A stretch of 54,770 bases of DNA, the filler included, from Sluysia triapertura (lineage: Eukaryota): assembly GCA_046118255.1 (NCBI GenBank). It is 4 parts of 4 records of this genome, joined end to end, with 100 filler letters (N's around TTAATTAATTAA, not from the genome) between each part and the next. Parts side by side here need not be neighbours in the genome. Positions count along the whole stretch, not along the records: positions 1 to 16,292 come from JBJNIA010207368.1; 3 more parts are not named here. One strand, 5' to 3'. Every line of letters starts with the position of its first letter. Position 1 is the first letter of the stretch. This document shows, piece after piece, positions 1,183 through 16,292 of the stretch. Below the pieces are notes generated by a model that was given only the letters and a program-made list of their open reading frames with translations, searched no databases and was not told the origin of the DNA. The position numbers and the translations under genes were made by a program.

Positions 1183-4100
1183 GTTATTTCGGTGTTACTC
1201 GATTATATGTTTGTATGTTACCTACCAAGAAATACAATATTTTGTAGTATCTCGAAGAATAAATTTATATTCAATTTAATTTGCTTGAATGATTTGTCTT
1301 GTTAGCACGCGGAGAAAGATTATTCGTTTATGGAAGTTAAGGTTCCCAGCCTTTGGAACCGATTGTTCTTGAATAAATTACGCAATAAGTACGGTATTTC
1401 TCTGGGTTCTTCGGAGATTTCATCATTCCATCTATATGCTTTTGTGTCCCAAAGACAATAATTGAAGACCTCTAGTCCAACTTATCAAGATGGGAGATCA
1501 ACATCATCATAAGTCGTACAACAACAATAGGCATCCGAATATTTTGTGTAGAATTTAAATGAAGTATTTCTCGAATCCGCAATAATCTAAACTAAATGAA
1601 ATGAGATACAAACATGCATAAGTTTTTAGACATTTAATAGTTGTTTCTTTTGGTGACCATTTCTCTCAGTAATCATCAAAAGGAGGTTGTCTGACGCGTA
1701 AAGTTCCATAACGATGAACGAAGTGAAATGATAAATAAATAGAAATAGAAAAACAGATTTTCAGAAACAGCAATTGGTTAGATATAGTGTCGCAAAGAAT
1801 TCCGTATTCCAAGCGATTTTGAATCGCTATTTCATAATAGATATATCGCTACTACACTGTGTTTTGCAGAATTAATGATAGATGAGGGTACTGCAAAGTG
1901 AATATACTTCATATTGTTTATATTTTCGATGAATTCTATTGGATGTTTTAATTTTCTGTTTTCAGACTTTGTTGGAGCTAATTTGGATTGTGTTATCCTG
2001 GATTCTGAAAATAACAAAAATTCCGTGGTACCAGTAATCGTACCCGAAAGCGATAACAAGTATGCAGTTCAATACAAACCAGTTTCAGAGGGTGTTCATT
2101 CTGTCAATGTTTATTTAAATGGTCAACAAGTTCCAAATTCCCCGTTCCGAGTGAACGTATCTCCAAGTTAGTGTATTTTACTAAAACTATTCGATTTTAT
2201 CTTCATTTCCACTTATGAATAACAATCCATGTATGCTAGTCTTAAGATCTTAGTCTTTTCGAGCTTCTCGCCATACTTAGAAAGTAACGGATTGGTGCAT
2301 CAGTTCGTGTGGTTTTTTACAATCATGAAAAATGCATACAGATCAAGAATAAAAACATGCAAAAAATTCCAGATGACAAAATGAATTTATTAAATCATTA
2401 GAAAAAACAAATACCTTAGTCTCAATCGGTGAGGTATTCTCCGCCACAATCGATCACTTCTTTTTCTACACCGTTCTGGCAGTTTGTCAATCCAACATTT
2501 TGTAATTTTTGGTAGAAAAATTCTTCAATCCACATTGTTATTGCTTCTTCGTTTTCAAATATGAAACCAGAAAGATGATTCGACATGGAGCGGAATTGTT
2601 CATTTTTTTCTACCTGACACTCCATTTTAATGAGGGTAATGAAAGTGAAAGTTCGTCTAAAACGAATATAACTCAAATCAGTTAAAACAAGAAGTTGGTC
2701 TGCTTTCTTTGCAACAAATAAAACCTCACGAATGTATGCACCAACATAATAGCAAGAATTCATGTGATCATTTGAAGTATTAGTCACTTAGATATTACAA
2801 TGTTTCACTAGAATGTAAACAAGTCTTATTTTTAGTATTATGATTAGTGCACATTAATAATAATAATGATAATGATAATAGTAATATTGTAATAATATAA
2901 TTATTCTTTGTACTCACAACATCCAAGACAATTGCAATGTGAACAATGCATTTCTTGATAAATTATTAATTATTAAATCTATGCTTACAACAATTACAAA
3001 AATAAAATGGTTACACACTTAGTAGTTCTATCACTACTACTACTAAAACAATTCTTCTACTTCAATGTAATACAATGAATACGAAGTACACATGATTTTA
3101 CTATGTGTATGAGCATATTGTTAGATATTTATTTGTTGTATTACATATTGTCGTATGTGAACAAATTAATCAATGAAAATGATCTTCGAAATGAAACGTT
3201 ATATTGAAATTTACAATTAAAATTAATTTACACCATTAAATTGCAATTAAATTTACAATTTACAACGACGAATAGTGAAGATTGCACATTGTGCTTTGTA
3301 ACGATGTAGGTCGTATTTGGAAATGTATAAGTGATATATTAAAGAATTTCACACTGAATATCAATGAAATGCCGAAGTTTGAATGTTGGAACACAGTGAT
3401 AATGTTTGTCAGGGAATGTCAAATCAGTAGAAGGTTATGAAATATTTAAGATTTCAAAGTTTTTAAATAATAATAATAATAAAGATCAAACGAAAATGAT
3501 GATATTGTAAAATTAGGATGTAATCCGAATCTGGTCGTTGTGACGGGTCGTGGAATTCAGTCGACTGGAATACGGGTCGAGGATAATGCCGATTTTGTGG
3601 TCGATACTTCCAAAGCTGGCAAAGGTGAACTGAAGGTGAGGTTGCTGGATCCGACTCGAAAAGAGGCGGAGGTTAAAATTGTGGAACAGAAACCTAATAT
3701 TTACAAGTGCATTTATGTACCATCAAAACAAGGTCAGTATCAATTGAACGTTGATTACGATGGTGTCCCAGTTCACAAATCACCTTACAAGATACAAGTT
3801 CTGCCTTACAAGGACTCGTGCATCAAGGCTTATGGTCCTGGGCTGGAGTGCAGTGTTGTAGATAAACCGGCTATTTTTGTGGTAGATACTGATGGTGACG
3901 CAGGAGCATTGGGTAGGTTCATTTGTGATTTCTAATTATATCACTGTCGACATGTTCCTCATCACTTTGTCTCATTCTAATCAAGTATTCTGATAAGTTT
4001 ATATTCTTATTGTACTTTCCAGGCTTTTCAATAGAAGGTCCAAGCCAAGCAAAAATCGAATGTTGCGACAATCAGGACTCTAGCGTGACTGTGTGTTACT

Positions 4101-5688
4101 GGCCCACGGAACCTGGCATGTATGCGATACACATCAGGTCGAATAATGAAGATATACCAAATTCGCCTTTCATGGCTCAAATTATTCCTAAAGAAGGCAA
4201 ATCTGATGTTTCCAAGGTTACCACTTCATTTTAATGTTGATTCGATATTAAACAGACCCAATAATATTAATAACAAAGGGAATAGTAATAATAGTAATAA
4301 TAATAATGATTATAATAAAGTAGAAAGCACATTAAATTGTTTAAATTTGAATAAAACTCATTTTATAAATTTAATATTTTGTGATTGTAATATTTAATAA
4401 ATTGTGATGAGCCATTAATAATAATTAAATAAATGTATTAAATTTCGAAATTAGTAGTATTGCTGTAATTTTTCTAACACTTACTATTTTTTGACAGGGT
4501 CCGGTTACAGTTGGCATTTCTGCAACTTGATAAGTTAATAACTACCTTAATTCTGATCTTACAGCCTTAAAACTGGCAGTTGAATTTAATACTTTTAAAG
4601 TACTTAAGGGTCTTCACACAAGGATACTTTACAAATGCTATTTTAACACAACGAATAGGACCAAAAACTCAAAAAATTTATATAAAAATTTAATAATTTA
4701 CAAAATTGTAATAGATATAATGAGAAAAAGGCAGAATAAAATTATTTATAAATATTAAACTATTTTAATATTTAACTTATTTATTGATGCTTAAGTTACT
4801 CTGTATTTTGCCACTCGATATATCGGGGAGACTTTAGAAATTTAATTTTATTAATCAAAATTAGTATCACCTCACAAAAAATAACTTCAATTTAACATGA
4901 ATTTGATAAAAAAGCGATTGTGAATAAAACAGCTAAATAAAATTTCCAAAATGGAGATTTTCATTAAATTGATGCTTGTTTATATGCTGGTCATCAACCA
5001 ATGAGACTCGATGGAATGCTCTGTAACATTCTAGAAGCTTCTATTCTATTTTTGGAAACGGATTTTCTTTTTTCTAAAATTTATTTTTTGGAAAATAATT
5101 ATTTTAAAATGATTTTAAAGATTTAAAAATGATTTTAAAGCATTTTAGAGGGCTGTGATGACGCATAAAGTAATGCAATTTTTATAATCTGCGGTTAACC
5201 AGGTGAGACGACGTGTACGCATTGAGTTTATAAGGAGTCAAAAAATGAAATGTTTGCACAATAAAACAAAAAGTTATAAAAATATCAATCATTTGTGTTA
5301 TCACTTACAATCTCCAAATGTGGCATTTGTACAAACAACCTTGATCGAAGTACATCGTTTACTGAACGTTTTTGGTATATTCACATCAATTTCTGGTGTA
5401 AAAGATCACATAAATATATCACTCCATTGAGACTGAACAAGCTCCACATTAGAGATATCTGTTCGCAGATTCTTTCGTGGTTATAAAGCTTATTCTTAGT
5501 TATCATTAGAAGTCTATCATTAAAATCCCTTCTAACTTATTGTCCAAAGTAATCTTAAAATTTTAAATGCGCTATATTTTTATTTCACATTATTTCACAT
5601 TTCTTATCAAATACATCATTGATATTTATTATGTTTTGTAAATATGATTCAAGTATTGATTTAGACCATCATTTAAAGTTATCTGTGC

Positions 5689-5738
<50 letters not shown>

Positions 5739-8700
5739 CAGTATTTGTTGAAATTTTATTTTATTTGTTGAATTTTATTTGATTGAATCAACAGATCTAG
5801 TAACCATGCGTAGTGGACGCTCGAAATAAAAAATCGATAAACAATTTGGTGTCTAAATAACCTCATAAACGACTCCATATTTAATAGGAAAACAAAGATT
5901 ATTGAAGGAACTCGAGTAACATTAGAAAATGGTCCCCTTAGAAGTCAGTAATTGAGTCAAACCGATGTTAAGATCGTGTGTACCTGTCTCTGGTAAGGGT
6001 GTAAATCGCGCACTGTAGACGAACTCTTATTTTGTAATTAATTATTATTATTAAACAATGACACATTCTCAGATTGAAATGACAATGAAAATTACTTTGA
6101 CTGTTTGAATAACTCAGATATTGACGATCCAAAATGATTCGTTTTTATTATGACTAAAAAAGGAGAAATGAAAATGATTATTAGAACAATTGTCTAGTTG
6201 AAATAAACAGTTGGATTACTCGAAATCGAGAGGTATTCGACGAACAGATTCCTTAATAATTACTAAAAATAGTTCAGTGTCAACTAATCAATAAATTTAT
6301 CCTTAATTTCGGATACTTTTGTGACGTCATATTTATCATTGACAATTTCTAAATTTTTATTAAAGTTGTGTTACTTATAAAAGTAAGTAGATAATTGTTA
6401 CTTTTTAATTCAGATTCAAGTAACTGGTCAAGGTGTAGTTGCTAATAAAGTTTATCTGGACAAAATGAATGAATTTGTAATTGATTGTACAGAATATGCA
6501 GAATATAACAATCACAATCCGATTGTCAAATGTTACCAGAGTGATGGGCAAGAAGTGCCTGTTAATATGACGTCTAGTGGGAAAAAATACTTATGCAAAT
6601 ATCAGCCTAAGTTGGCAGGTAATCATAAAGTCTTCATTACTGTTGATGATCAATCCATTGCTAAGAGTCCCTATCGAGTAAGTGTGTCGCAGTAATCGAA
6701 AAACTAATTTATTCAGATTCATGTTCCAAAACTAGCAGAACCTGAGAAAGTGCGAGTATTTGGTGACGGTGCTTCTCATGCCCAGCGATTTAAGCCCTCC
6801 AAATTCATCATCGACACCACTAACGCAGGTGATGCAAATCTAATGGTTGATATAACTGACGAATTCGGAAATTCGATTTCTTCCAAGATCACCCGCGATG
6901 CAGATCCGTACATTTACGAGGTCGAATATACGCCAGTCACCGTGGGGCCTGCATATACGTGCTCTGTTCTGTTCAACGGTGTTCCCATACCAAGCAGTCC
7001 TTTCATAATCAAAATTGAACCCGACATTGATGTGTCTGACGTTTTTGTGGAAAATCTAGAAAAAAGTATTTAATTCTTTTCAATATATTTTATAAATGAA
7101 TATTCGAACTGAAGTAGCAGTTGTGCAACTTATTAGTAGCACGAATAATTGTTAAAAGGGCGGGCAAGCCGGGCGAATGCTCAGAACGCCGATATAAAAA
7201 TATAATATTGTTTTACATTCATTATTTTTTTGATTTTATAAATTACAATCTATCATTTTTATGAGATATCGATTTTTTTAGCAAGCAATAACTTTTTTCT
7301 TTAATAATACCAAATAAAGGTCATAACGCTAATTATTTTAATATTGTAAACTGCTTACAAACTGATTTTCAAAAAAAATTAATTTAATTAACTGTTATTG
7401 AATTTTTGACAAATAGCATTACAAAAGATCTTGTACGTCACACGTATGCAACTGGAATAGCATGACTTGCTTTTCAAAGTTCTCATCCTTTCGTCGCTCT
7501 AACTTCAAATGTGCTCGTTATGTTATTCCATATGTTGTATTGCTTTTAAGTAAATAACTATCTCGTTACTTTTTAAATAACTAAATTTTTTACAGTTATT
7601 TATTGTGTAATTTTGATTTTATGTCCTTTTTTTACTATTTTTTAAATTCGCACTAAATGTGTATATTCTTGTATAAAAGGGCGTCAAATTTTGTTTTGTC
7701 CGGGTTGCTCAAAACCCTAGATCTGGCATTGCTTGACAAATGAAAATGTAAAGCGAGACAGAATATATTGATTCTTCTTCGTGACATCACATTTGAACGA
7801 ATTAGTGAATGCGCTTTCAAGAAAAATTTCTACCGGAAGTTCCATTTAATTGATTTAATTGAATTAATTGGTCAGTACTTTACAAATCAGAACAGATATC
7901 TGTAATAACACGATAGTCAACACAGATAAGTATTTTTGTACGACCGCTAACATTTCTTAATTGCTTGATGCTGAATGTTGAAAAGCATTTTAAAAATAGT
8001 TCTAATAAACGTTGATGCGGTTGTGAATATTTAGATGTCTCGTTTTTATTTGATTGTTAGTCGGTTTTATGCGGTAAGGCCCTCTTTCTGATCGTATTAT
8101 CGAACTATCGAATGGATTTATAATTTAAAATAAGACACAATAGAGCGTCTCAGTAATGATCTCAGTAGCTTCTGAAATCAATAAAGAATGGAGTTTTTCT
8201 AAAAAAAAAGTGTAATAAAGACGAAGTGGAACTTATTACTTTTAGTAGCATTTTAATAAGACATGAAAAAACGAATACTAAGAGACAAATTAATAAATTA
8301 TAATATTATAGAAGAAAATTAATGAATGACCGGATGAAATTGGCCACATTATCATATACATACTATTAACTGTAAAAAATAATAATATAAATGAATTATA
8401 GACAAATTATTGTAGAATGGAATCGAAGAATTAATTGGTCATGCCGGTGAATAATACTGCATAAATGGGGTTTTTCGTATATTATTGAGATCGCATATTG
8501 AAGATCATAATTATTTGAATTTTTTAGAAATATTCCAAGAGTCTTTTGTCCGATTCGGTGTCAATGCTACCGCAATCGATAAATCTGGCAAGGGTATTGT
8601 AAAGGCGATTTTCACGGATTCAAATGGTTATAAGTCGGCTAGTGTGGTGAAGAATATGGGCGACGGTCACTACAAGTGCAATTATTCACCGTTTAATGCT

Positions 8701-11700
8701 GGTTCGTCAATAATTTATTATTGATTTTATAAGAATATGCTTATTTCAAGATATTGCAAGCCTGAGAAGTTGTCGGGCAATGAGGCATCTGCATTGTACC
8801 GATATTTTTTTAACTTTTGTATCTTTTTCCATATCGCATACGAACTCCAAAGTGCGTATTAGAACATTTTAAAATGAAATAACAGATTTTTGATATCTTT
8901 TCTTCACTCGACCGAATTTTTGTAATTGAATCTCGAATCGGTCCGGAATGTTTCAGTAAATAAATGTGCATTATTTGATCTTATTATTTTAGGTATGTAT
9001 GAATTGAACGTGACCTACAACGATTTGCCGTTAAAGACGAACCCAATAATGGTAGAAGTGGTTCCTGGTTGCGATGCCAGTCGTATTACGGTATCTGGTG
9101 ACGGTCTCCAAGGTGGTATTACGAATAAGCTTTCAGTATTCACTATCGATCTCGATGGAGCTGGTCAAGGCAATCTTAGTTTGGCTATTGAAGGTCCATC
9201 TGATGCCAAGATCAAATGCGTGGATAATATGGATGGAACTTGTACAGTAGAATACAGTTCAACATTACCGGGCTTGTACGACATCTATATCAAGTTCAAT
9301 GACGAAGATATTAAAGGTTTATATTTGTTTAGAGTCAGTTGTTTCAATCTTTATTTTTGTTCCTTTCGAGTACCGTTCTGTTCTAGTAGCATGCTCAAAA
9401 ATAGATTTATTTGAACTTTTATCCTCGTTAGGTTTTCCCATTCGGGTTTATCATAAGGATCAAGATTCAACTAGAGAAGATAAAATTGTCTGTAACTCTC
9501 CAAATGCCATTGACGATACGGAACGAACAGATGCAGATAGTATTCTCCAGTCTCTGACTACTGCTGCCGACAATTTATCTCCATCTGTTCAGTCGCATCA
9601 TCGTTTTGGTGCTTGTCTCAATCCGTGCACTGCCAATACCACATATTCTGTTACATCACCAGTAAATCACAATATGTCATCCTCAGAACATGTCGGTGAT
9701 TCGTATTTCGATATAACATATGCGCAGACCGTACAAACGAACATCAACAATGATCTGGGTTGCAATGTTGACTCTGCTTATTCCTCAATCACGCCTCTGT
9801 CTACCACCACAAAATGTATCGTCAAACGCGACCCTCAGAACATTAACTTCAGTTTTCCTAGCAATCAATCGTATTTTTCAATGACCTTTGTAGATAGTAG
9901 ACATTCTGGTGGCGATAATAGCAGCTTATCCATACCATCAGAGTTCTCTGACATATTTCTGGATGCTACTACAGGAGGGCTGCTGGATGCCAGAGCATTT
10001 TTGACGGAGAAATATTTGAAAAGCTTTTTTACGGATAAGTCCCAGACCTTGAACGAAACTGCAAATACTAAGGCCGACTCTAACGAAATCGAAGATGACG
10101 ATGAAGCTCAATTATATGGATGCAGTAGTGTTAATTCATATGACGACTTTCTCGACGAAGAATTTGACTCTGGGCCAAATGACAAGGAGCCGAATGAAAA
10201 TAATGGTCGCAAAATGAACAACGGAGGCGCTGTGTGTTCTGTGAGATTGTCTACACTGGTCGAGGACTCTAATGAAGACGCGTACACTGACAACACTTTA
10301 GTCGGAGCTAGTAACCGAACTAGCAAAGCCACAAGTCGATCGTCGATTCGAGAAGAAGCTATGAGTTTTGATAAAGAAAATGATGACTATGAAAGTGATA
10401 ACACAGCTAAATCCAACTCCAATTTGACTCCGTGTCGATGGAAAACCAACAATTTGGCCTTGAAAAGCGCACCTCAGTCACCTACCAAAGAAATGAAAGA
10501 ACAAATTCCCATTAATGGACCGCCTAAAAAATCGTTTTCTTCCGACAACATCTTCAATGTAAAGAGTGTATTTCCAAGTACAATTTCTTTCGACATTGAT
10601 TTAAAATCGTCAAATAAAGTTTTAGCTCGACTTCTGTTCGAAAAAAGTCGTAAACCTCCGATTCCACAACGTAGTAATAAAGAAATGTGTTGCTCTCAAT
10701 TTCCGGAACCGCCCACACACAACTTTGCAGCTTCATCTGAATCTATGAGCCAGAATGGAAGTGACGACCAAGCATTTAATTTGCCGAGTTTCCCGAAACA
10801 AGATAACTTTGATTCCGAAGTTGAATGCGAAGACGAAGACGAACAAGCAGCTAATATCAATCAGAGGTCGATTGAATGTGTCAGCAAAACCGACTTCGAA
10901 GATGACGATAATGCCAATGATGTCACGTGGACTGAGTCGTTTTGTTTTCCGAAATTCCATCAAGTGGTTTATGAAACTATTCAATCTTTTATTGACGAAT
11001 TCCATAATACTAAACCAGAATGCACTTCAGAGGAATTACATATCCTAAATTTTTCCAGAAATATTCAAGTGTTTCAAGTACGGACTTGGCTCAGTACTTG
11101 CGCGATAAACCGTGTTTTCTGTCAAGAGTTGTCGGATCACGATGTAGCACTAAGTAACGACAGTTATTCTGGAACGAAATTTTCAATACCTTCAAATATT
11201 ATAAAATTATGTGACAATGTTTCCTTTGAAATGACAAGTAATAACTGCAATAACTCTCGAATCGAAAATCACTGCAACCAGGATAAATCTAAGCAGAGCA
11301 AGTCAATATCGGTGTCAGTTTCTCTGTCTAAAAGCACCTCAACCAATGTACCCAGCCACAATGCACTGCTGCGTGCAGAAGAATTGCAACCCATGCTCGA
11401 CTATATAGACATAACACAAGAACTGCCCTATGTTGTTATACCCAGATATTACTACTATTTCAAAGAAGTCATTAAAGTACGCAAGAAAGTACCATTTTAT
11501 GTGAGTTTCAGTTTTCCAAATATTGCAACTTATCGAAATCCGAACGGGACAAATATTGCACTGAATTCGCTGACTAATATTTTTCCTCGAAAAACAAGTC
11601 CAAAGTCAGTCTATTCTTCCAGTAATATCGATTCTTGGAATTTTACTCAAGAGCCAGATGAACTGTCGTACACACTGCCACCACCACCTCCATCGCCATT

Positions 11701-14700
11701 TTCCTTTGATTTTATTTGCAGCCCGAATCAATCGGAATACTTTAATAAAGCCCAAGTTTCTTTGGACGACTTGATACAACAAACTTCATTCATTGACAGT
11801 CTTGTTCAACGAAATACCGAGTCCTTGAAACAAGAACTTGGTCTTAATGACTCCAAAACGAATTTAGGTAAGTTCTCTATGAATGCAGATTCCGCTATGA
11901 GACATTCTCACATTAGAAGCAAGTCTGCTGATAATAAACTGGTGTCAGAGAGATTTGTCAATTCGACGACACAATCTTTCCCGGAAAATTATGTAAATCT
12001 ATCCAAATCGAATTTAAATCAGCCGAAACGAAAGTCTCTTGTGTCGGTGCAGGCTTCATCAATATCACAGATTAATAATGTTCGTCCTCAATTCGATTCT
12101 TGCGATTCTTCGTTATCTAAGTGGTGGAGTGAATCAACAAATGAAAATTTATTAAAACAAATACAGTACAACAATCTGTGCCCATTCCCGCTCGTTAGGA
12201 ATACGTTTCTGTCATCGATATCTTCGTCATCGTCATCCACATCAACGTTATTAGGAAAATCGAATCCGTATCAACTTGAAAATGAGCATCGGAATCAACG
12301 GCACCCACGACAACATTTGCGACACCACAACCGCCATTCTCGACAAATTATTCGAAATACTAGTACAAACATTTTCGGATCCGACAACAGTTGTTACGAA
12401 ATTTACAATAAAAATTGTAGAAATATGAACTTAAACACCATTAGTTCTTTGATTCGCAACAACACCGGTTATTGAATAAACATTTTTTTGTTTATAGTTC
12501 AGTGTTTGTTTACCGAGTTGATTTTTTAACCAAAAACAATGCGCATATATCATATTGTTTATTTTATGAAAATGAATCAACTTGTCTAAATGTACTAAGT
12601 ATTTTTTTGTACTGGCCAAGTTCAATTAATTGTTTCCTTAATTTATTGTTTCGCACATTTTCCTTCAATGCTTGCTACATTGTAAACAATTCATTCTAGA
12701 TGAGATTAATAATATGTCAATTTTCTATTGGCTGATACAATTATAAGTACTTTGAAATTTTATCAAATAAAAAACCAAATTTTCAAAATAATTTTTCATT
12801 CTAATTATGAGTCATTGTTTTGATGATACCATTTATTCATCATTATTGTAAAGTAGGACGAGAAAATTATTCACCAATGACAAATTATTCATCTTCGAGC
12901 ATTTTTTGGTTATCTTTTAATTGAACAAACACATTTTGCTGCTACTTATAATTTATATTTTTCTTACTTTAGGTAGTCCGTTCAGAGTTCCAATTAAAGA
13001 TCCAGTTAATGCAGAGAAAGTTAAATGTTTCGGTTCTATTTTAAATCCAGAAGCAGTCCATCGTGCAGACACTCCAATCAAATTTGTCGTAGATGTTTCC
13101 AGAGCTGGAGAAGCGCCTTTAACGGTAAGGATGAATTAATTTAAATTGTGTTTCATACTTTTTCCTGCAAAACTTATAATTTTAGTCTTTCGATATTCGA
13201 TTCTTTCAAGTGGTGGTGACAAAATGCTATATTAAAAAGATATATTACCACTACTTTCATTTTTATAAATGATAAGCATTAGTTCGTGTAAGATACGAAA
13301 TTCCAGACAGTTTTGTTGCTAACCAAACTATAAGCCTATAGATACATGTCGCACAAAATTAATTGTATCTGTGCCTCATTTATTTATTACCTTTTATTAA
13401 TTTCTTGAATTTCAAACTTTTTAGCTATTTCACGGCGATACTTACGCTTTTTCTTCATTATTTTTGGCATGGTGCTACCATTTTTCGAGTCCACGAATTC
13501 GCTTATTGTCATTATTATCCTTAATCCCTATTACATTATTGATTTCAAGTATTTTCAGCACCACAAAGTATTTAATAACCTTGTGATAATTGACATGAAG
13601 TTGGACAATTAACTACTGATACATTATTTAAAAATCTGTGCTGTTGATGTAAAAATTCAATAAAAAGAATCGAGCTTAACAAGTATAACTTATATATCTA
13701 TTTTTAATGATATTTCTTTGGTTTACCTGTATAATTTATTCAATCAATTTATCAAACAGTTTCAAATTAAAATTTATTGAAATAATTCGACCGATATGCA
13801 TTCCTCACGCGAAGCTTTATTTGCCATAACATCTTTTATTACATTGTTCAATACTTAGATTTAAAAATTATTGTTATTTTATATAAGATAATAATAATTT
13901 ATTTAGATTGAAGTAAAAGATAGTCATGGCAATCTGTTGCCAATATCAATGGAACAGAGAAATGTGGCTGCACCAGGAATATACGATGTCAGCGTAATTC
14001 CAGAAATTGCCGACAAATACGAATTAGATATTCAATTTGCAAATCAGAACGTTCTTCCGGAATCCCCATATTTTGTTAATGTGCTACCGTCATCGGAACC
14101 AGACAAAGTTTTGTTAGACGGAGATGGAATCTTTCCAGAATTAGGGTACCTGGAAGCTGGTGTACCGGTACAATTTACCGTGGACGCTTCTAAAGCCGGA
14201 AAAGGAGATTTGGAAATTTCAATATTAGTTAGTACTTGAAAGCTTAAATGGTTAATGATAATATCGAATTAGAGAAGTATTTTAAGTATTTTTAATTGTG
14301 GAATGATTTAGAGGTTGTACCAAAGAACCGTGATATTACACAAACTCGACGGCTAGCTCATTTTCGAACTTCTTTATAATGATAATATTTTTATTTTCCT
14401 GCTCTACTTTAATGATTGTATTTTAATTTAGAATCCAGAAGGCCAACCAATTGCAATCCACGTAGTCGACGAAGGAAATGGAATATATAAGTGTCATTAC
14501 ACTCCGCAAGATGCTGGTCATAACCGTGTCAATGTTTCTTTCAATAATCATTTGATTACTGGAAAACCAATAAATGTCAAAGTAGTTCCTGTTGGTCAAG
14601 CTAAATCATGTTTTATAGAAGGTTTATTTGTTTTTTTATTCATAATTAAAAACAGATGGGAAAATCGAATATGTGCTACAAAATTCTGAATGTATCATTA

Positions 14701-15274: not shown

Positions 15275-15966
15275 GTTAGTTGTTTAATTTGTTTTATTTT
15301 CAATATATACTTTGACGGTACCGCTATTTCTTTGACCACCATCATTTGAAATAACTTTTAAGTGGATAATAATAATTCCAAGATTTACAGGTGACGCAAT
15401 TCAAAATCAATGACTTGATTTTTTAAGAATATCATAATTCTGTGTTCAGTCGTCATCATTATTATCAGTTATGACGTAAGAAGCATCTGGTTCTAACTCG
15501 AAGTATCCCACTCTATTAATTTATGTTTGAATGATGGTGACATTTCACTATTATAAAATGGATAATGTGATTCTTATAACATTCGAATTATATAAGTGAA
15601 TTTTCTGCCAAATTTTATGTACTACAATTGATTAATCTCGTCTTTTTTTGTAAAACTTTAAAATAAGAACAATATTTATTTGATTCCGTCGTACGACTCG
15701 TTTTTCTATTCTCAATTTACAAAATTCAATAGTATGTGGTGTCTGGGAATTCAGTTAGATATAAATCGGAAGTGTATCTGTTGATTAAGTGAGATAATTA
15801 TTTAAAATGCATTATCTACTTATTTTAATAAGTAGATAATATTAAATTTATTTTATAATTAAACGCTTGATGTTTTATTTCGAAGTAGATATCAATAAAA
15901 TACTTACTAGACTAATTCAAATTTTCATTTTTTGACTAATTTCATTATTATTTGACTAAGTTCTCT

Positions 15967-16292
15967 ATTAAATACCATATATATGCTGATGACGTGCAAA
16001 TATATACTCAATTTGAAATGACCAACATAGAAAATACCATTCAAAGAACAGAAGAACTAGTATCTGAATTGATAAAATAGTTTGGAAATAAATACTTGAA
16101 AATAATCAATGAAGAAAAGTGAGAATTTATAATCTTCAGTAATAAAAATAGCGACAATACCAAAATAAATGAAACAGTGTTAATTGTAGATGCGAAGCAA
16201 AAATTATAGGCTATTTTATATGGATTCAAAATGAACATGGAAGAAAATATTAATTGTATTGTTAAAAAGTGTAAATATCAATTAAATAAAAT
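15967..16292 (+). mobile_element. LINE (L2/CR1-like) reverse transcriptase remnant, truncated by the contig end
   Basis: Encodes IKYHIYADDVQIYTQF (YADD catalytic motif at 15982-15993) and later MNMEENINCIVKKCKYQL; interrupted by stops and frameshifts. Confidence 0.8.

What the first reader, a model, noticed from the sequence alone, without database searches (positions are those of the whole stretch)
9432..12475. Hidden ~3-kb giant alternative exon inside the filamin gene, implying a 'giant filamin' isoform
Seen: the 3,656-nt intron between exons 8993-9316 and 12973-13124 contains a same-strand ORF of >1,000 codons, which is very unlikely by chance in DNA this AT-rich. It has an AG acceptor (9430-9431) in exactly the phase of the upstream donor. 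A candidate donor G|GTTATT at 12467/12468 has the same hexamer as the donor at 1182/1183. This gives a 3,036-nt (1,012-codon) symmetric phase-1 cassette that rejoins exon 12973 in frame, and the ORF closes only two codons past that donor. The product is S/N/D/T-rich with no filamin repeat, transposase or RT motif. Known: giant alternative exons convert cytoskeletal adaptors such as ankyrins into specialised giant isoforms, and vertebrate FLNC has a short insertion in repeat 20. Inference: this lineage makes a filamin with a ~1,000-aa spacer or scaffold at the end of the repeat-12-like domain. I do not know of such an insertion at this position.
Basis: partly seen in the sequence, partly recalled or inferred. 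Interest (0 to 1): 0.85.

Follow-up and report, generated by a model that had tools for sequence, protein, structure and literature searches.

The report
Giant alternative exon in filamin gene
A 3-kb protein-coding stretch with no known relatives lies in an intron of a filamin gene and carries the signals of an optional exon that could add about 1,000 disordered residues to filamin or end it early with a long tail, but there is no RNA data to show which is made.

Summary
A same-strand open frame of 1,074 codons (9251-12472, stop 12473-12475) fills most of the 3,656-nt intron between filamin exons 8993-9316 and 12973-13124. Chance probability is about 1e-30. Its GC content and codon usage are exon-like in that frame only.

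It is single copy in the one DNA run. It has no LTR or TIR, no Pfam domain, no PDB match, and no homolog among 1.84 billion representative proteins.

The AG at 9430-9431 is in phase but weak. The donor CCG|GTTATT at 12467|12468 ranks 4th of 150 GTs in the ORF.

This is followed by an unusually T/G-rich 50 nt, which looks like a poly(A) site.

My best reading is an optional filamin exon with a composite 3' end. Splicing on gives a giant filamin. Polyadenylation gives a filamin truncated after about Ig8, with a 1,014-residue disordered tail.

The insertion point is repeat 8 by colinear count, not repeat 12, and it falls just before strand G.

No RNA run and no orthologous locus could be found. 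Expression, and the choice between cassette and terminal use, are untested.

The parts
8993..9316 (+). Constitutive filamin exon: the end of Ig7 plus strands A-F of Ig8. Its donor is AAG|GTTTAT, phase 1.
   Evidence: Pfam Filamin E=3e-19. PDB FLNA Ig19/Ig17-like hits. Leave-one-out donor score 7.0 bits. The ortholog exon in L001 has the same boundaries.
9317..9431 (+). Proposed 115-nt intron ending in a pyrimidine tract and AG (9430-9431). It would be removed when the giant exon is used.
   Evidence: GC 0.30 and T 0.48. Codon score -0.10, which is intron-like. Acceptor score 0.96 bits against -0.7 to 12.7 for the 12 real acceptors. It is open in the ORF frame, but 7% of intronic 38-codon windows are open too.
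9432..12467 (+). Giant optional coding exon in its cassette form: 3,036 nt, 1,012 codons, phase 1 to phase 1. The product is S/N/D/T-rich and mostly predicted to be disordered.
   Evidence: Open frame with P about 1e-30. Codon log-likelihood +0.19 bits/codon, against -0.70+-0.24 for introns and negative values in the other frames. GC 0.36-0.43 against 0.26-0.30 in introns. AF2 mean pLDDT 30. No Pfam, NCBIfam or PDB match and no homologs.
9432..9458 (+). The exon start encodes (G)FPIRVYHKD. This resembles strand G of a filamin repeat; compare (G)SPFRVPIKD at the start of exon 12973.
   Evidence: Against a profile of this gene's own strand-G segments it ranks 12th of 1,006 positions, or 44th without the exon-9 segment. 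This is modest support only.
11865..11875 (+). Second in-phase candidate donor, TAG|GTAAGT (exon end 11867). It is the best-scoring GT in the ORF and would give a shorter 812-codon cassette.
   Evidence: 8.5-9.2 bits. The codon score weakens after about 11950, but the frame stays open for about 200 more codons.
12465..12475 (+). Candidate 5' splice site CCG|GTTATTGA (exon end 12467). It is in phase with exon 12973.
   Evidence: 6.77 bits, or 6.45 with site 1182 left out of the matrix. It ranks 4th of 150 GTs in the ORF and 2nd of 54 in phase. Only 0.8% of 360 intronic GTs score as high.
12473..12475 (+). TGA stop codon of the open frame. It is used if the donor is not spliced.
12475..12530 (+). 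Candidate poly(A) site: AATAAA (12475-12480) followed by a T/G-rich downstream element (12481-12530).
   Evidence: AATAAA occurs 3.4 times per kb in introns. The following 50 nt are 72% T+G, in the top 1.1% of intronic windows. That is above the matching stretch after all 12 real donors, which ranges 0.40-0.66.
12973..13124 (+). Constitutive downstream filamin exon: strand G of Ig8 (SPFRVPI) plus the start of Ig9. It has a strong acceptor.
   Evidence: Pfam Filamin. Acceptor 9.9 bits.

Best explanation
The ORF is an optional, lineage-specific coding exon of the filamin gene.

**Entry into the exon.** Normally the strong donor at 9316 joins the strong acceptor at 12973. In some cells or stages the weak acceptor at 9431|9432 would be chosen instead. 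Translation then runs from Ig8 strand F into the ORF, whose first residues (FPIRV) may stand in for strand G.

**Two exits at the 3' end.** The exon carries two competing signals 8 nt apart.
- An in-phase 5' splice site at 12467|12468. Using it gives a full-length filamin with a 1,012-residue disordered insert.
- A stop codon overlapping AATAAA, followed by a T/G-rich element. Using it gives a filamin of ABD plus Ig1-8 plus a 1,014-residue tail, with no C-terminal dimerisation repeat.

This is the layout of a composite internal/terminal exon.

**What is shown and what is inferred.**
- Shown: the ORF, its coding-like statistics, and the sequence signals.
- Inferred: that any of these signals is used.

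**My odds.**
- It is a filamin exon entered from 9316: about 0.65. That is the confidence given for this explanation.
- Given that, both exits are used 0.4, cassette only 0.3, terminal only 0.3.
For: - **The ORF cannot be chance.** P is about 1e-30.
- **Exon-like statistics.** GC content and frame-specific codon usage resemble the filamin exons.
- **Coding starts before the first internal Met.** The stretch 9431-9673 scores +0.29 bits/codon with GC 0.41. The first internal Met is residue 82, at 9674. The coding region therefore needs an upstream start, which the filamin exon supplies in the right phase.
- **Intron-like gap.** The 115 nt between them is intron-like in composition.
- **Strand-G-like start.** The start ranks 12th to 44th of 1,006 positions.
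- **Good donor at the end.** A donor this good occurs in phase only twice in 1,014 codons, yet one lies in the last three codons.
- **Poly(A) signals.** AATAAA overlaps the stop, and the next 50 nt are more T/G-rich than 99% of intron windows and than all 12 real intron starts.
- **Not a mobile element.** Depth is single copy, no extra contigs lie on the ORF, and no flanking repeats were found.
- **The concept is established.** Composite terminal exons are described in PMC4227790 and PMC3708835.
Against: - No RNA run holds the sequence, so no junction or 3' end was seen.
- No homolog was found in any database, so conservation and purifying selection cannot be shown.
- The acceptor is weak at 0.96 bits. 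Other in-phase AGs exist at 9387, 9390, 9405 and 9465.
- The strand-G resemblance is only p about 0.01-0.04.
- In the one relative found, the first 279 nt of the orthologous intron hold no comparable ORF start.
- Splice matrices were built from only 12 sites of one gene.
- A cassette would leave Ig8 with two candidate G strands 1,000 residues apart.
- A poly(A) signal overlapping the stop would give an unusually short 3' UTR.
Confidence: 0.65

Rival explanations
1. Pure in-frame cassette. The exon is always spliced 12467>12973 and gives only a giant filamin. The stop and AATAAA just after the donor are ordinary AT-rich intron sequence. This is a sub-case of the best explanation that differs only in the 3' fate, so its confidence is part of the 0.65 and not additional to it.
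For: The donor is in phase and high-scoring. It has the same hexamer as the real donor at 1182. A stop within two codons of the end of constraint has a chance of about 0.15 at this composition. The cassette is symmetric phase 1-1, like exons 2, 3, 7 and 8 of this gene.
Against: An AATAAA within 10 nt has a chance of about 3%, and the T/G-rich 50 nt are in the top 1%. Together they are hard to dismiss. The insert splits an Ig fold before strand G, and the exon appears to bring its own G-like strand.
Confidence: 0.2
2. Pure alternative last exon. The transcript always ends at the poly(A) site after 12480. The product is ABD plus Ig1-8 plus a 1,014-residue tail, and the GT at 12468 is a coincidence. 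This is also a sub-case of the best explanation, so its confidence is part of the 0.65.
For: Stop, AATAAA and a T/G-rich element are all present. The G-strand-like start completes Ig8 locally. Long unique exons are far more often terminal than internal (general knowledge). Truncated actin-binding filamin isoforms exist, for example Drosophila Jbug-PL (bioRxiv 10.1101/2020.10.13.337626).
Against: Finding an in-phase donor of this quality in the last three codons has a chance of about 0.006.
Confidence: 0.2
3. Independent gene nested in the intron on the same strand, with its own promoter. It would start at ATG 9299 inside filamin exon 8, with the 115 nt retained and a hydrophobic N-terminus, or from an unseen upstream exon of its own.
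For: The frame is open from 9251 through the 115-nt segment. The residues after ATG 9299 read like a signal peptide, and the product is S/T/N-rich with many N-x-S/T sites.
Against: 7% of intronic 38-codon windows are open by chance. This segment has intron-like GC (0.30) and an intron-like codon score, and T-rich introns translate as hydrophobic by default. A start codon 18 nt before a strong host donor is awkward. The in-phase donor at the end, the phase match and the G-strand-like start would all be coincidences. The first Met inside the exon proper is residue 82, with clearly coding sequence upstream of it.
Confidence: 0.15
4. Recently acquired foreign or mobile-element ORF, or a retrocopy, that is still intact but is not part of filamin expression.
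For: The sequence is an orphan with no homolog anywhere. The codon score is lower than in filamin exons, +0.19 against 0.33-0.68.
Against: No RT, transposase or integrase domain. No LTR, TIR or poly(A) tail remnant. Depth is single copy and no second contig lies on the ORF at 95% likeness. No viral relative. There is no ATG at the start of the coding-like part.
Confidence: 0.08

Closest known systems
Giant exons of ankyrins (vertebrate 480-kDa ankyrin-G and 440-kDa ankyrin-B; Drosophila Ank2-L/XL). From my own knowledge, not tested here.
   Same: A single multi-kilobase, in-frame, mostly disordered, lineage-restricted optional exon turns a cytoskeletal adaptor into a giant isoform.
   Different: The host protein is different, and there is no sequence similarity. 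In ankyrins the insert lies between folded domains; here it would fall inside an Ig repeat before its last strand. Ankyrin inclusion is documented by cDNA and protein, and here nothing is.
Drosophila Jitterbug isoform Jbug-PL, and the short and long Cheerio isoforms (bioRxiv 10.1101/2020.10.13.337626)
   Same: One filamin-type gene gives isoforms with actin-binding domains and only the first part of the Ig rod, through alternative 3' ends. This matches the terminal-exon outcome proposed here.
   Different: The paper describes Jbug-PL as three CH domains plus seven Ig repeats. It reports no 1,000-residue unique tail. This window's gene is the canonical FLNA/Cheerio type by its best PDB matches.
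Composite terminal exons, where an internal exon becomes a 3' end when its 5' splice site loses to a nearby intronic poly(A) site (PMC4227790, PMC3708835; the immunoglobulin mu secreted/membrane switch from my own knowledge)
   Same: A 5' splice site is followed within a few nucleotides by an in-frame stop, an AATAAA and a U/GU-rich element.
   Different: The known cases have mapped 3' ends. Here only the sequence signals exist, and the exon is itself optional and unusually long.
Vertebrate filamin variable regions (the FLNC insertion in Ig20, and hinge-1 alternative exons). From my own knowledge.
   Same: Optional unstructured sequence is inserted in the filamin rod.
   Different: Those inserts are tens of residues, not about 1,000. 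They lie in rod 2 or the hinge, not in Ig8, and they are conserved across vertebrates.

Membership tests
Filamin (host gene) | Tandem Filamin/ABP280 Ig repeats (Pfam PF00630) | tested here: met
   Exons 8995-9315 (E=3e-19) and 12975-13124 match PF00630. Exon 3483-3920 matches FLNA Ig3-5 at E=2e-34. Exon 8 matches FLNA Ig19 and Ig17.
Filamin (the ORF itself) | The ORF product contains filamin repeats or CH domains | tested here: not met
   No Pfam family at E<=1 and no PDB sequence match at E<=1. Only the first 9 residues resemble a strand G.
Giant in-frame cassette exon (ankyrin-type) | Uninterrupted open exon of over 2 kb, a multiple of 3, with phase-matched acceptor and donor | tested here: met
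   9432-12467 is 3,036 nt, phase 1 to phase 1. Donor 6.5-6.8 bits and acceptor 0.96 bits.
Giant in-frame cassette exon (ankyrin-type) | Both junctions seen in mRNA | not testable with these tools
   The only run that holds the sequence is the DNA source.
Giant in-frame cassette exon (ankyrin-type) | The exon is conserved as an open frame in related species | tested here: inconclusive
   Zero homologs. The one relative's contig ends 279 nt into the orthologous intron.
Composite internal/terminal exon | A 5' splice site followed closely by an in-frame stop and a poly(A) signal with a U/GU-rich downstream element | tested here: met
   The donor at 12467|12468, TGA at 12473-75, AATAAA at 12475-80 and 72% T+G in 12481-12530, which is the top 1.1% of intron windows.
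Composite internal/terminal exon | Mapped cleavage site and competing spliced product | not testable with these tools
   No RNA or 3'-end data.
Transposable element or viral ORF | RT, integrase, transposase or capsid domain; terminal repeats; multiple copies | tested here: not met
   No Pfam domain. No LTR or TIR. Uniform depth of 22 with no second contig on the ORF. No viral-contig relative.
Nested independent gene | Own initiation codon at the start of the coding-like region | tested here: not met
   Coding-like sequence (+0.29 bits/codon) runs for 81 codons before the first Met inside the exon. The only upstream ATG, at 9299, lies inside filamin exon 8 and needs an intron-like segment to be retained.

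The most novel reading that the evidence does not exclude
The cassette form is made. Its 1,012-residue insert sits between strands F and G of filamin Ig8, so the domain has two alternative G strands: the exon's own FPIRV next to strand F, and the constitutive SPFRV about 1,000 residues away. That would create a strand-swap or force-sensitive module inside rod 1. A U1-versus-poly(A) competition 8 nt from the stop would then decide between this giant filamin and a monomeric truncated one.
Probability: 0.12. Interest if true: 0.75.

Novelty: new variant of a known kind. Interest (0 to 1): 0.45.

Why it matters
Filamins are usually described as a fixed rod of Ig repeats whose known variable parts are tens of residues long. 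I found no paper that mentions both filamin and a giant exon.

If this exon is used, two things follow:
- Filamin would join ankyrins among cytoskeletal adaptors that gain a lineage-specific giant disordered module from a single exon.
- One gene could switch between two products. One is a dimeric cross-linker with a long flexible spacer. The other is a monomeric actin-binding scaffold that lacks the dimerisation repeat.

The paired donor and poly(A) signals make this directly testable by RT-PCR and 3'-end mapping.

If the organism is a flatworm, as its 34-39-nt mini-introns suggest, the orphan tail could matter for tegument or muscle biology in that group.

If the exon is not expressed, the locus is still a clear example of a long orphan ORF kept open inside an intron.

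Tried and rejected
**Searches that found nothing**
- Homology for the ORF: word-indexed search (only proteins of 558-1,775 aa), full phmmer against 1.84 billion representatives, Pfam and NCBIfam, PDB sequences and viral contigs. All were empty.
- Exact-sequence look-up of the ORF: not on record.
Laying its contigs showed one contig across 8400-13400 with uniform depth, and no joints.

**Search for orthologous loci**
- The exon-8 search gave two fragments.
- One was a 1,583-nt Logan contig that ends 279 nt into the intron. The other had no DNA.
- The exon-10 search found nothing.
- The metagenome scan gave one bacterial false positive, L002, carrying efflux-pump genes.

**Other attempts**
- AF2 on the single sequence gave mean pLDDT 30 and is uninformative about fold. 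No fold search was run on it.
- My first recollection was that Drosophila Jbug-PI has a long unique tail. The paper showed this was wrong: PI is 16 Ig repeats without CH domains.
- I first thought the strand-G mimic was strong evidence. A profile ranking showed it is only modest.
- I first thought GTTATT was a weak donor. This gene's donors are mostly GTT..., so it is a good one here.


Full report
**The observation**

The window holds 12 exons of a canonical filamin gene on the + strand. I placed them by open stretches, GT/AG sites and phase arithmetic. The introns range from 34 to 3,656 nt.

The largest intron, 9317-12972, lies between exon 8993-9316 and exon 12973-13124. Both of these exons match Pfam Filamin.

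Inside this intron, on the same strand, one frame is open from 9251 to 12472, which is 1,074 codons. The stop is TGA at 12473-12475.

- At the window's base composition, the probability of an open frame this long is about 3e-37. At the ORF's own composition it is 2e-30.
- The other five frames of the same DNA carry 42-102 stops.

- The AG at 9430-9431 follows a pyrimidine-rich tract. The exon start at 9432 completes the split codon G|GT.
- The donor CCG|GTTATT at 12467|12468 has the same hexamer as the donor at 1182|1183.
- The cassette is 3,036 nt, a multiple of three.
- The frame closes two codons after the donor.

**Is it coding, and whose is it?**

- GC content is 0.36-0.43 across the ORF, against 0.26-0.30 in the flanking introns.
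- I built a codon log-likelihood from the 1,020 filamin codons of the window against intron trinucleotides.
  - It gives +0.19 bits/codon in the ORF frame and -0.34 and -0.63 in the other two frames.
  - Intron windows give -0.70 ± 0.24.
  - The signal holds along the exon and fades after about 11950.
- The sequence is single copy in the one DNA run that holds it. A single contig spans 8400-13400, and no other contig lies on the ORF.
- There are no flanking direct or inverted repeats.
- There is no Pfam or NCBIfam domain, no PDB sequence match and no viral-contig relative.
- There is no homolog in the word-indexed search, nor in a full phmmer pass over 1.84 billion representative proteins.

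The ORF is therefore an orphan, and nothing marks it as a mobile element.

The product is 14.7% S and 10.2% N. It has no transmembrane-like segment. AF2 on the single sequence gives mean pLDDT 30, with weak helices only at about residues 508-569. This fits a mostly disordered protein, although a single-sequence model is weak evidence.

**The 5' end**

The first Met inside the exon proper is residue 82, at position 9674. The 81 codons before it are clearly coding-like, at +0.29 bits/codon and GC 0.41. Translation must therefore enter from upstream.

The filamin donor at 9316 leaves one base of a codon, and the AG at 9430-9431 restores the ORF frame exactly.

The 115 nt in between are intron-like: GC 0.30, T 0.48 and codon score -0.10. 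That segment is open in the ORF frame, but so are 7% of intronic 38-codon windows.

The acceptor scores only 0.96 bits on a matrix of this gene's 12 acceptors, whose leave-one-out range is -0.7 to 12.7. The constitutive acceptor at 12973 scores 9.9. A weak site competing with a strong one is what a regulated optional exon would show. It also means the site is not proven.

The junction falls just before the last β-strand of the repeat. The constitutive next exon begins (G)SPFRVPIKD, and the ORF begins (G)FPIRVYHKD. Against a profile of this gene's own strand-G segments, the ORF start ranks 12th of 1,006 positions, or 44th if the exon-9 segment is left out. This is suggestive but not strong.

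**The 3' end**

This gene's donors are unusual. Seven of 12 begin GTT, so GTTATT is a good donor here.

- It scores 6.77 bits, or 6.45 with the identical site at 1182 removed from the matrix.
- It ranks 4th of 150 GTs in the ORF and 2nd of 54 in phase.
- Only 0.8% of 360 intronic GTs score as high.
- In-phase sites of that quality occur twice in 1,014 codons. Finding one in the last three codons by chance has a probability of about 0.006.

The same few bases also read TGA-ATAAA, so an AATAAA at 12475-12480 overlaps the stop.

- AATAAA occurs 3.4 times per kb in the introns. One within 10 nt of the stop has a chance of about 3%.
- The next 50 nt are 72% T+G. That is in the top 1.1% of intronic windows and above the matching stretch after all 12 real donors, which ranges 0.40-0.66.

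This is the layout of a metazoan poly(A) site.

A 5' splice site followed within a few nucleotides by a stop and a poly(A) signal is how composite internal/terminal exons are built (PMC4227790, PMC3708835). My reading is that the sequence encodes both exits. I cannot say which is used.

A second strong in-phase donor, TAG|GTAAGT at 11867, could give a shorter cassette of 812 codons.

**Where in filamin**

Exon 3483-3920 aligns to FLNA Ig3-5 (PDB 4m9p, residues 3-135, E=2e-34). Counting repeats colinearly from that anchor, exon 8993-9316 holds the end of Ig7 and strands A-F of Ig8.

By sequence this repeat is closest to FLNA Ig19 and Ig17.

The two possible products are:

- **Terminal form:** the actin-binding domain, Ig1-8 and a 1,014-residue tail, with no C-terminal dimerisation repeat.
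- **Cassette form:** the whole rod, with 1,012 residues inserted before strand G of Ig8.

**Rivals**

- **A nested gene starting at ATG 9299.**
  - It would have a hydrophobic N-terminus, but it needs an intron-like segment to be retained, and its start codon would lie 18 nt before a strong host donor.
  - It would also leave the phase match, the strand-G-like start and the terminal donor as coincidences.
  - I give it 0.15.
- **A recently acquired foreign or mobile ORF.** There is no supporting feature beyond orphan status. I give it 0.08.

**Relatives and lineage**

Only two fragmentary relatives of exon 8 exist in the protein collection, at 73-74% identity.

The one with DNA, L001, has introns of about 50-60 nt around the orthologous exons. 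After the exon-8 donor, however, it has at least 279 nt of intron that contain neither exon 9 nor an ORF start. The orthologous intron is therefore enlarged there too, but the contig ends before it can say more.

The window's mini-introns of 34 and 39 nt match the roughly 36-bp intron class described for flatworms (PMC5036155). That is an inference about the lineage, not an identification.

**Comparison with what is known, and verdict**

The closest analogues are listed here.

- Ankyrin giant exons (my own knowledge).
- Truncated actin-binding filamin isoforms such as Drosophila Jbug-PL (bioRxiv 10.1101/2020.10.13.337626).
- Composite terminal exons.

A search for papers holding both "filamin" and "giant exon" found none.

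I rate this as a new variant of a known kind.

- The exon interpretation is plausible, at about 0.65.
- The specific giant-filamin cassette is one of two roughly equally supported outcomes.
- Nothing about expression has been tested.

Noticed in passing
window 6678-6716 and 14622-14655: Two mini-introns of 39 and 34 nt sit beside introns of 0.1-3.7 kb. Seven of the gene's 12 donors begin GTT rather than GTA/GTG. The roughly 36-nt intron class is described for flatworms (PMC5036155), so the genome may be a flatworm's. This is an inference only.
   Followed up: partly
window 15940-16077 (+): A short open stretch with an ADD-containing motif (YADDVQIY) weakly matches reverse transcriptase RVT_1 (E=0.042, below Pfam's cut-off). 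It is probably a decayed retroelement fragment downstream of the last filamin exon seen.
   Followed up: partly
L001 1305-1583: In the only relative with DNA (Logan contig, 73% identical exon 8), the orthologous intron is at least 279 nt, while its neighbouring introns are about 50-60 nt. The contig ends before showing what the intron contains.
   Followed up: partly
window 10084-10107, 10828-10851, 10891-10914: There are three copies of a 24-nt motif. Each encodes an acidic cluster in the ORF product: [16 protein letters not shown] and DFEDDDNA. The product also has an LPPPPPSP proline run near residue 750 and a His/Arg/Gln-rich stretch near the C-terminus. These may be short linear motifs.
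   Followed up: no
window 5619-5771 (+): A trinucleotide repeat in the 2.2-kb intron reads as a run of about 20 leucines in one frame. It is a simple repeat, not a gene.
   Followed up: no
window 2422-2787 (-): A 121-codon ORF lies on the opposite strand inside the 1.35-kb intron. It has no Pfam match. I did not examine it further.
   Followed up: partly
window 11867|11868: The best-scoring GT in the whole ORF (TAG|GTAAGT, 8.5-9.2 bits) is also in phase with exon 12973. The codon-usage signal weakens downstream of it. A shorter 812-codon cassette is therefore possible.
   Followed up: partly
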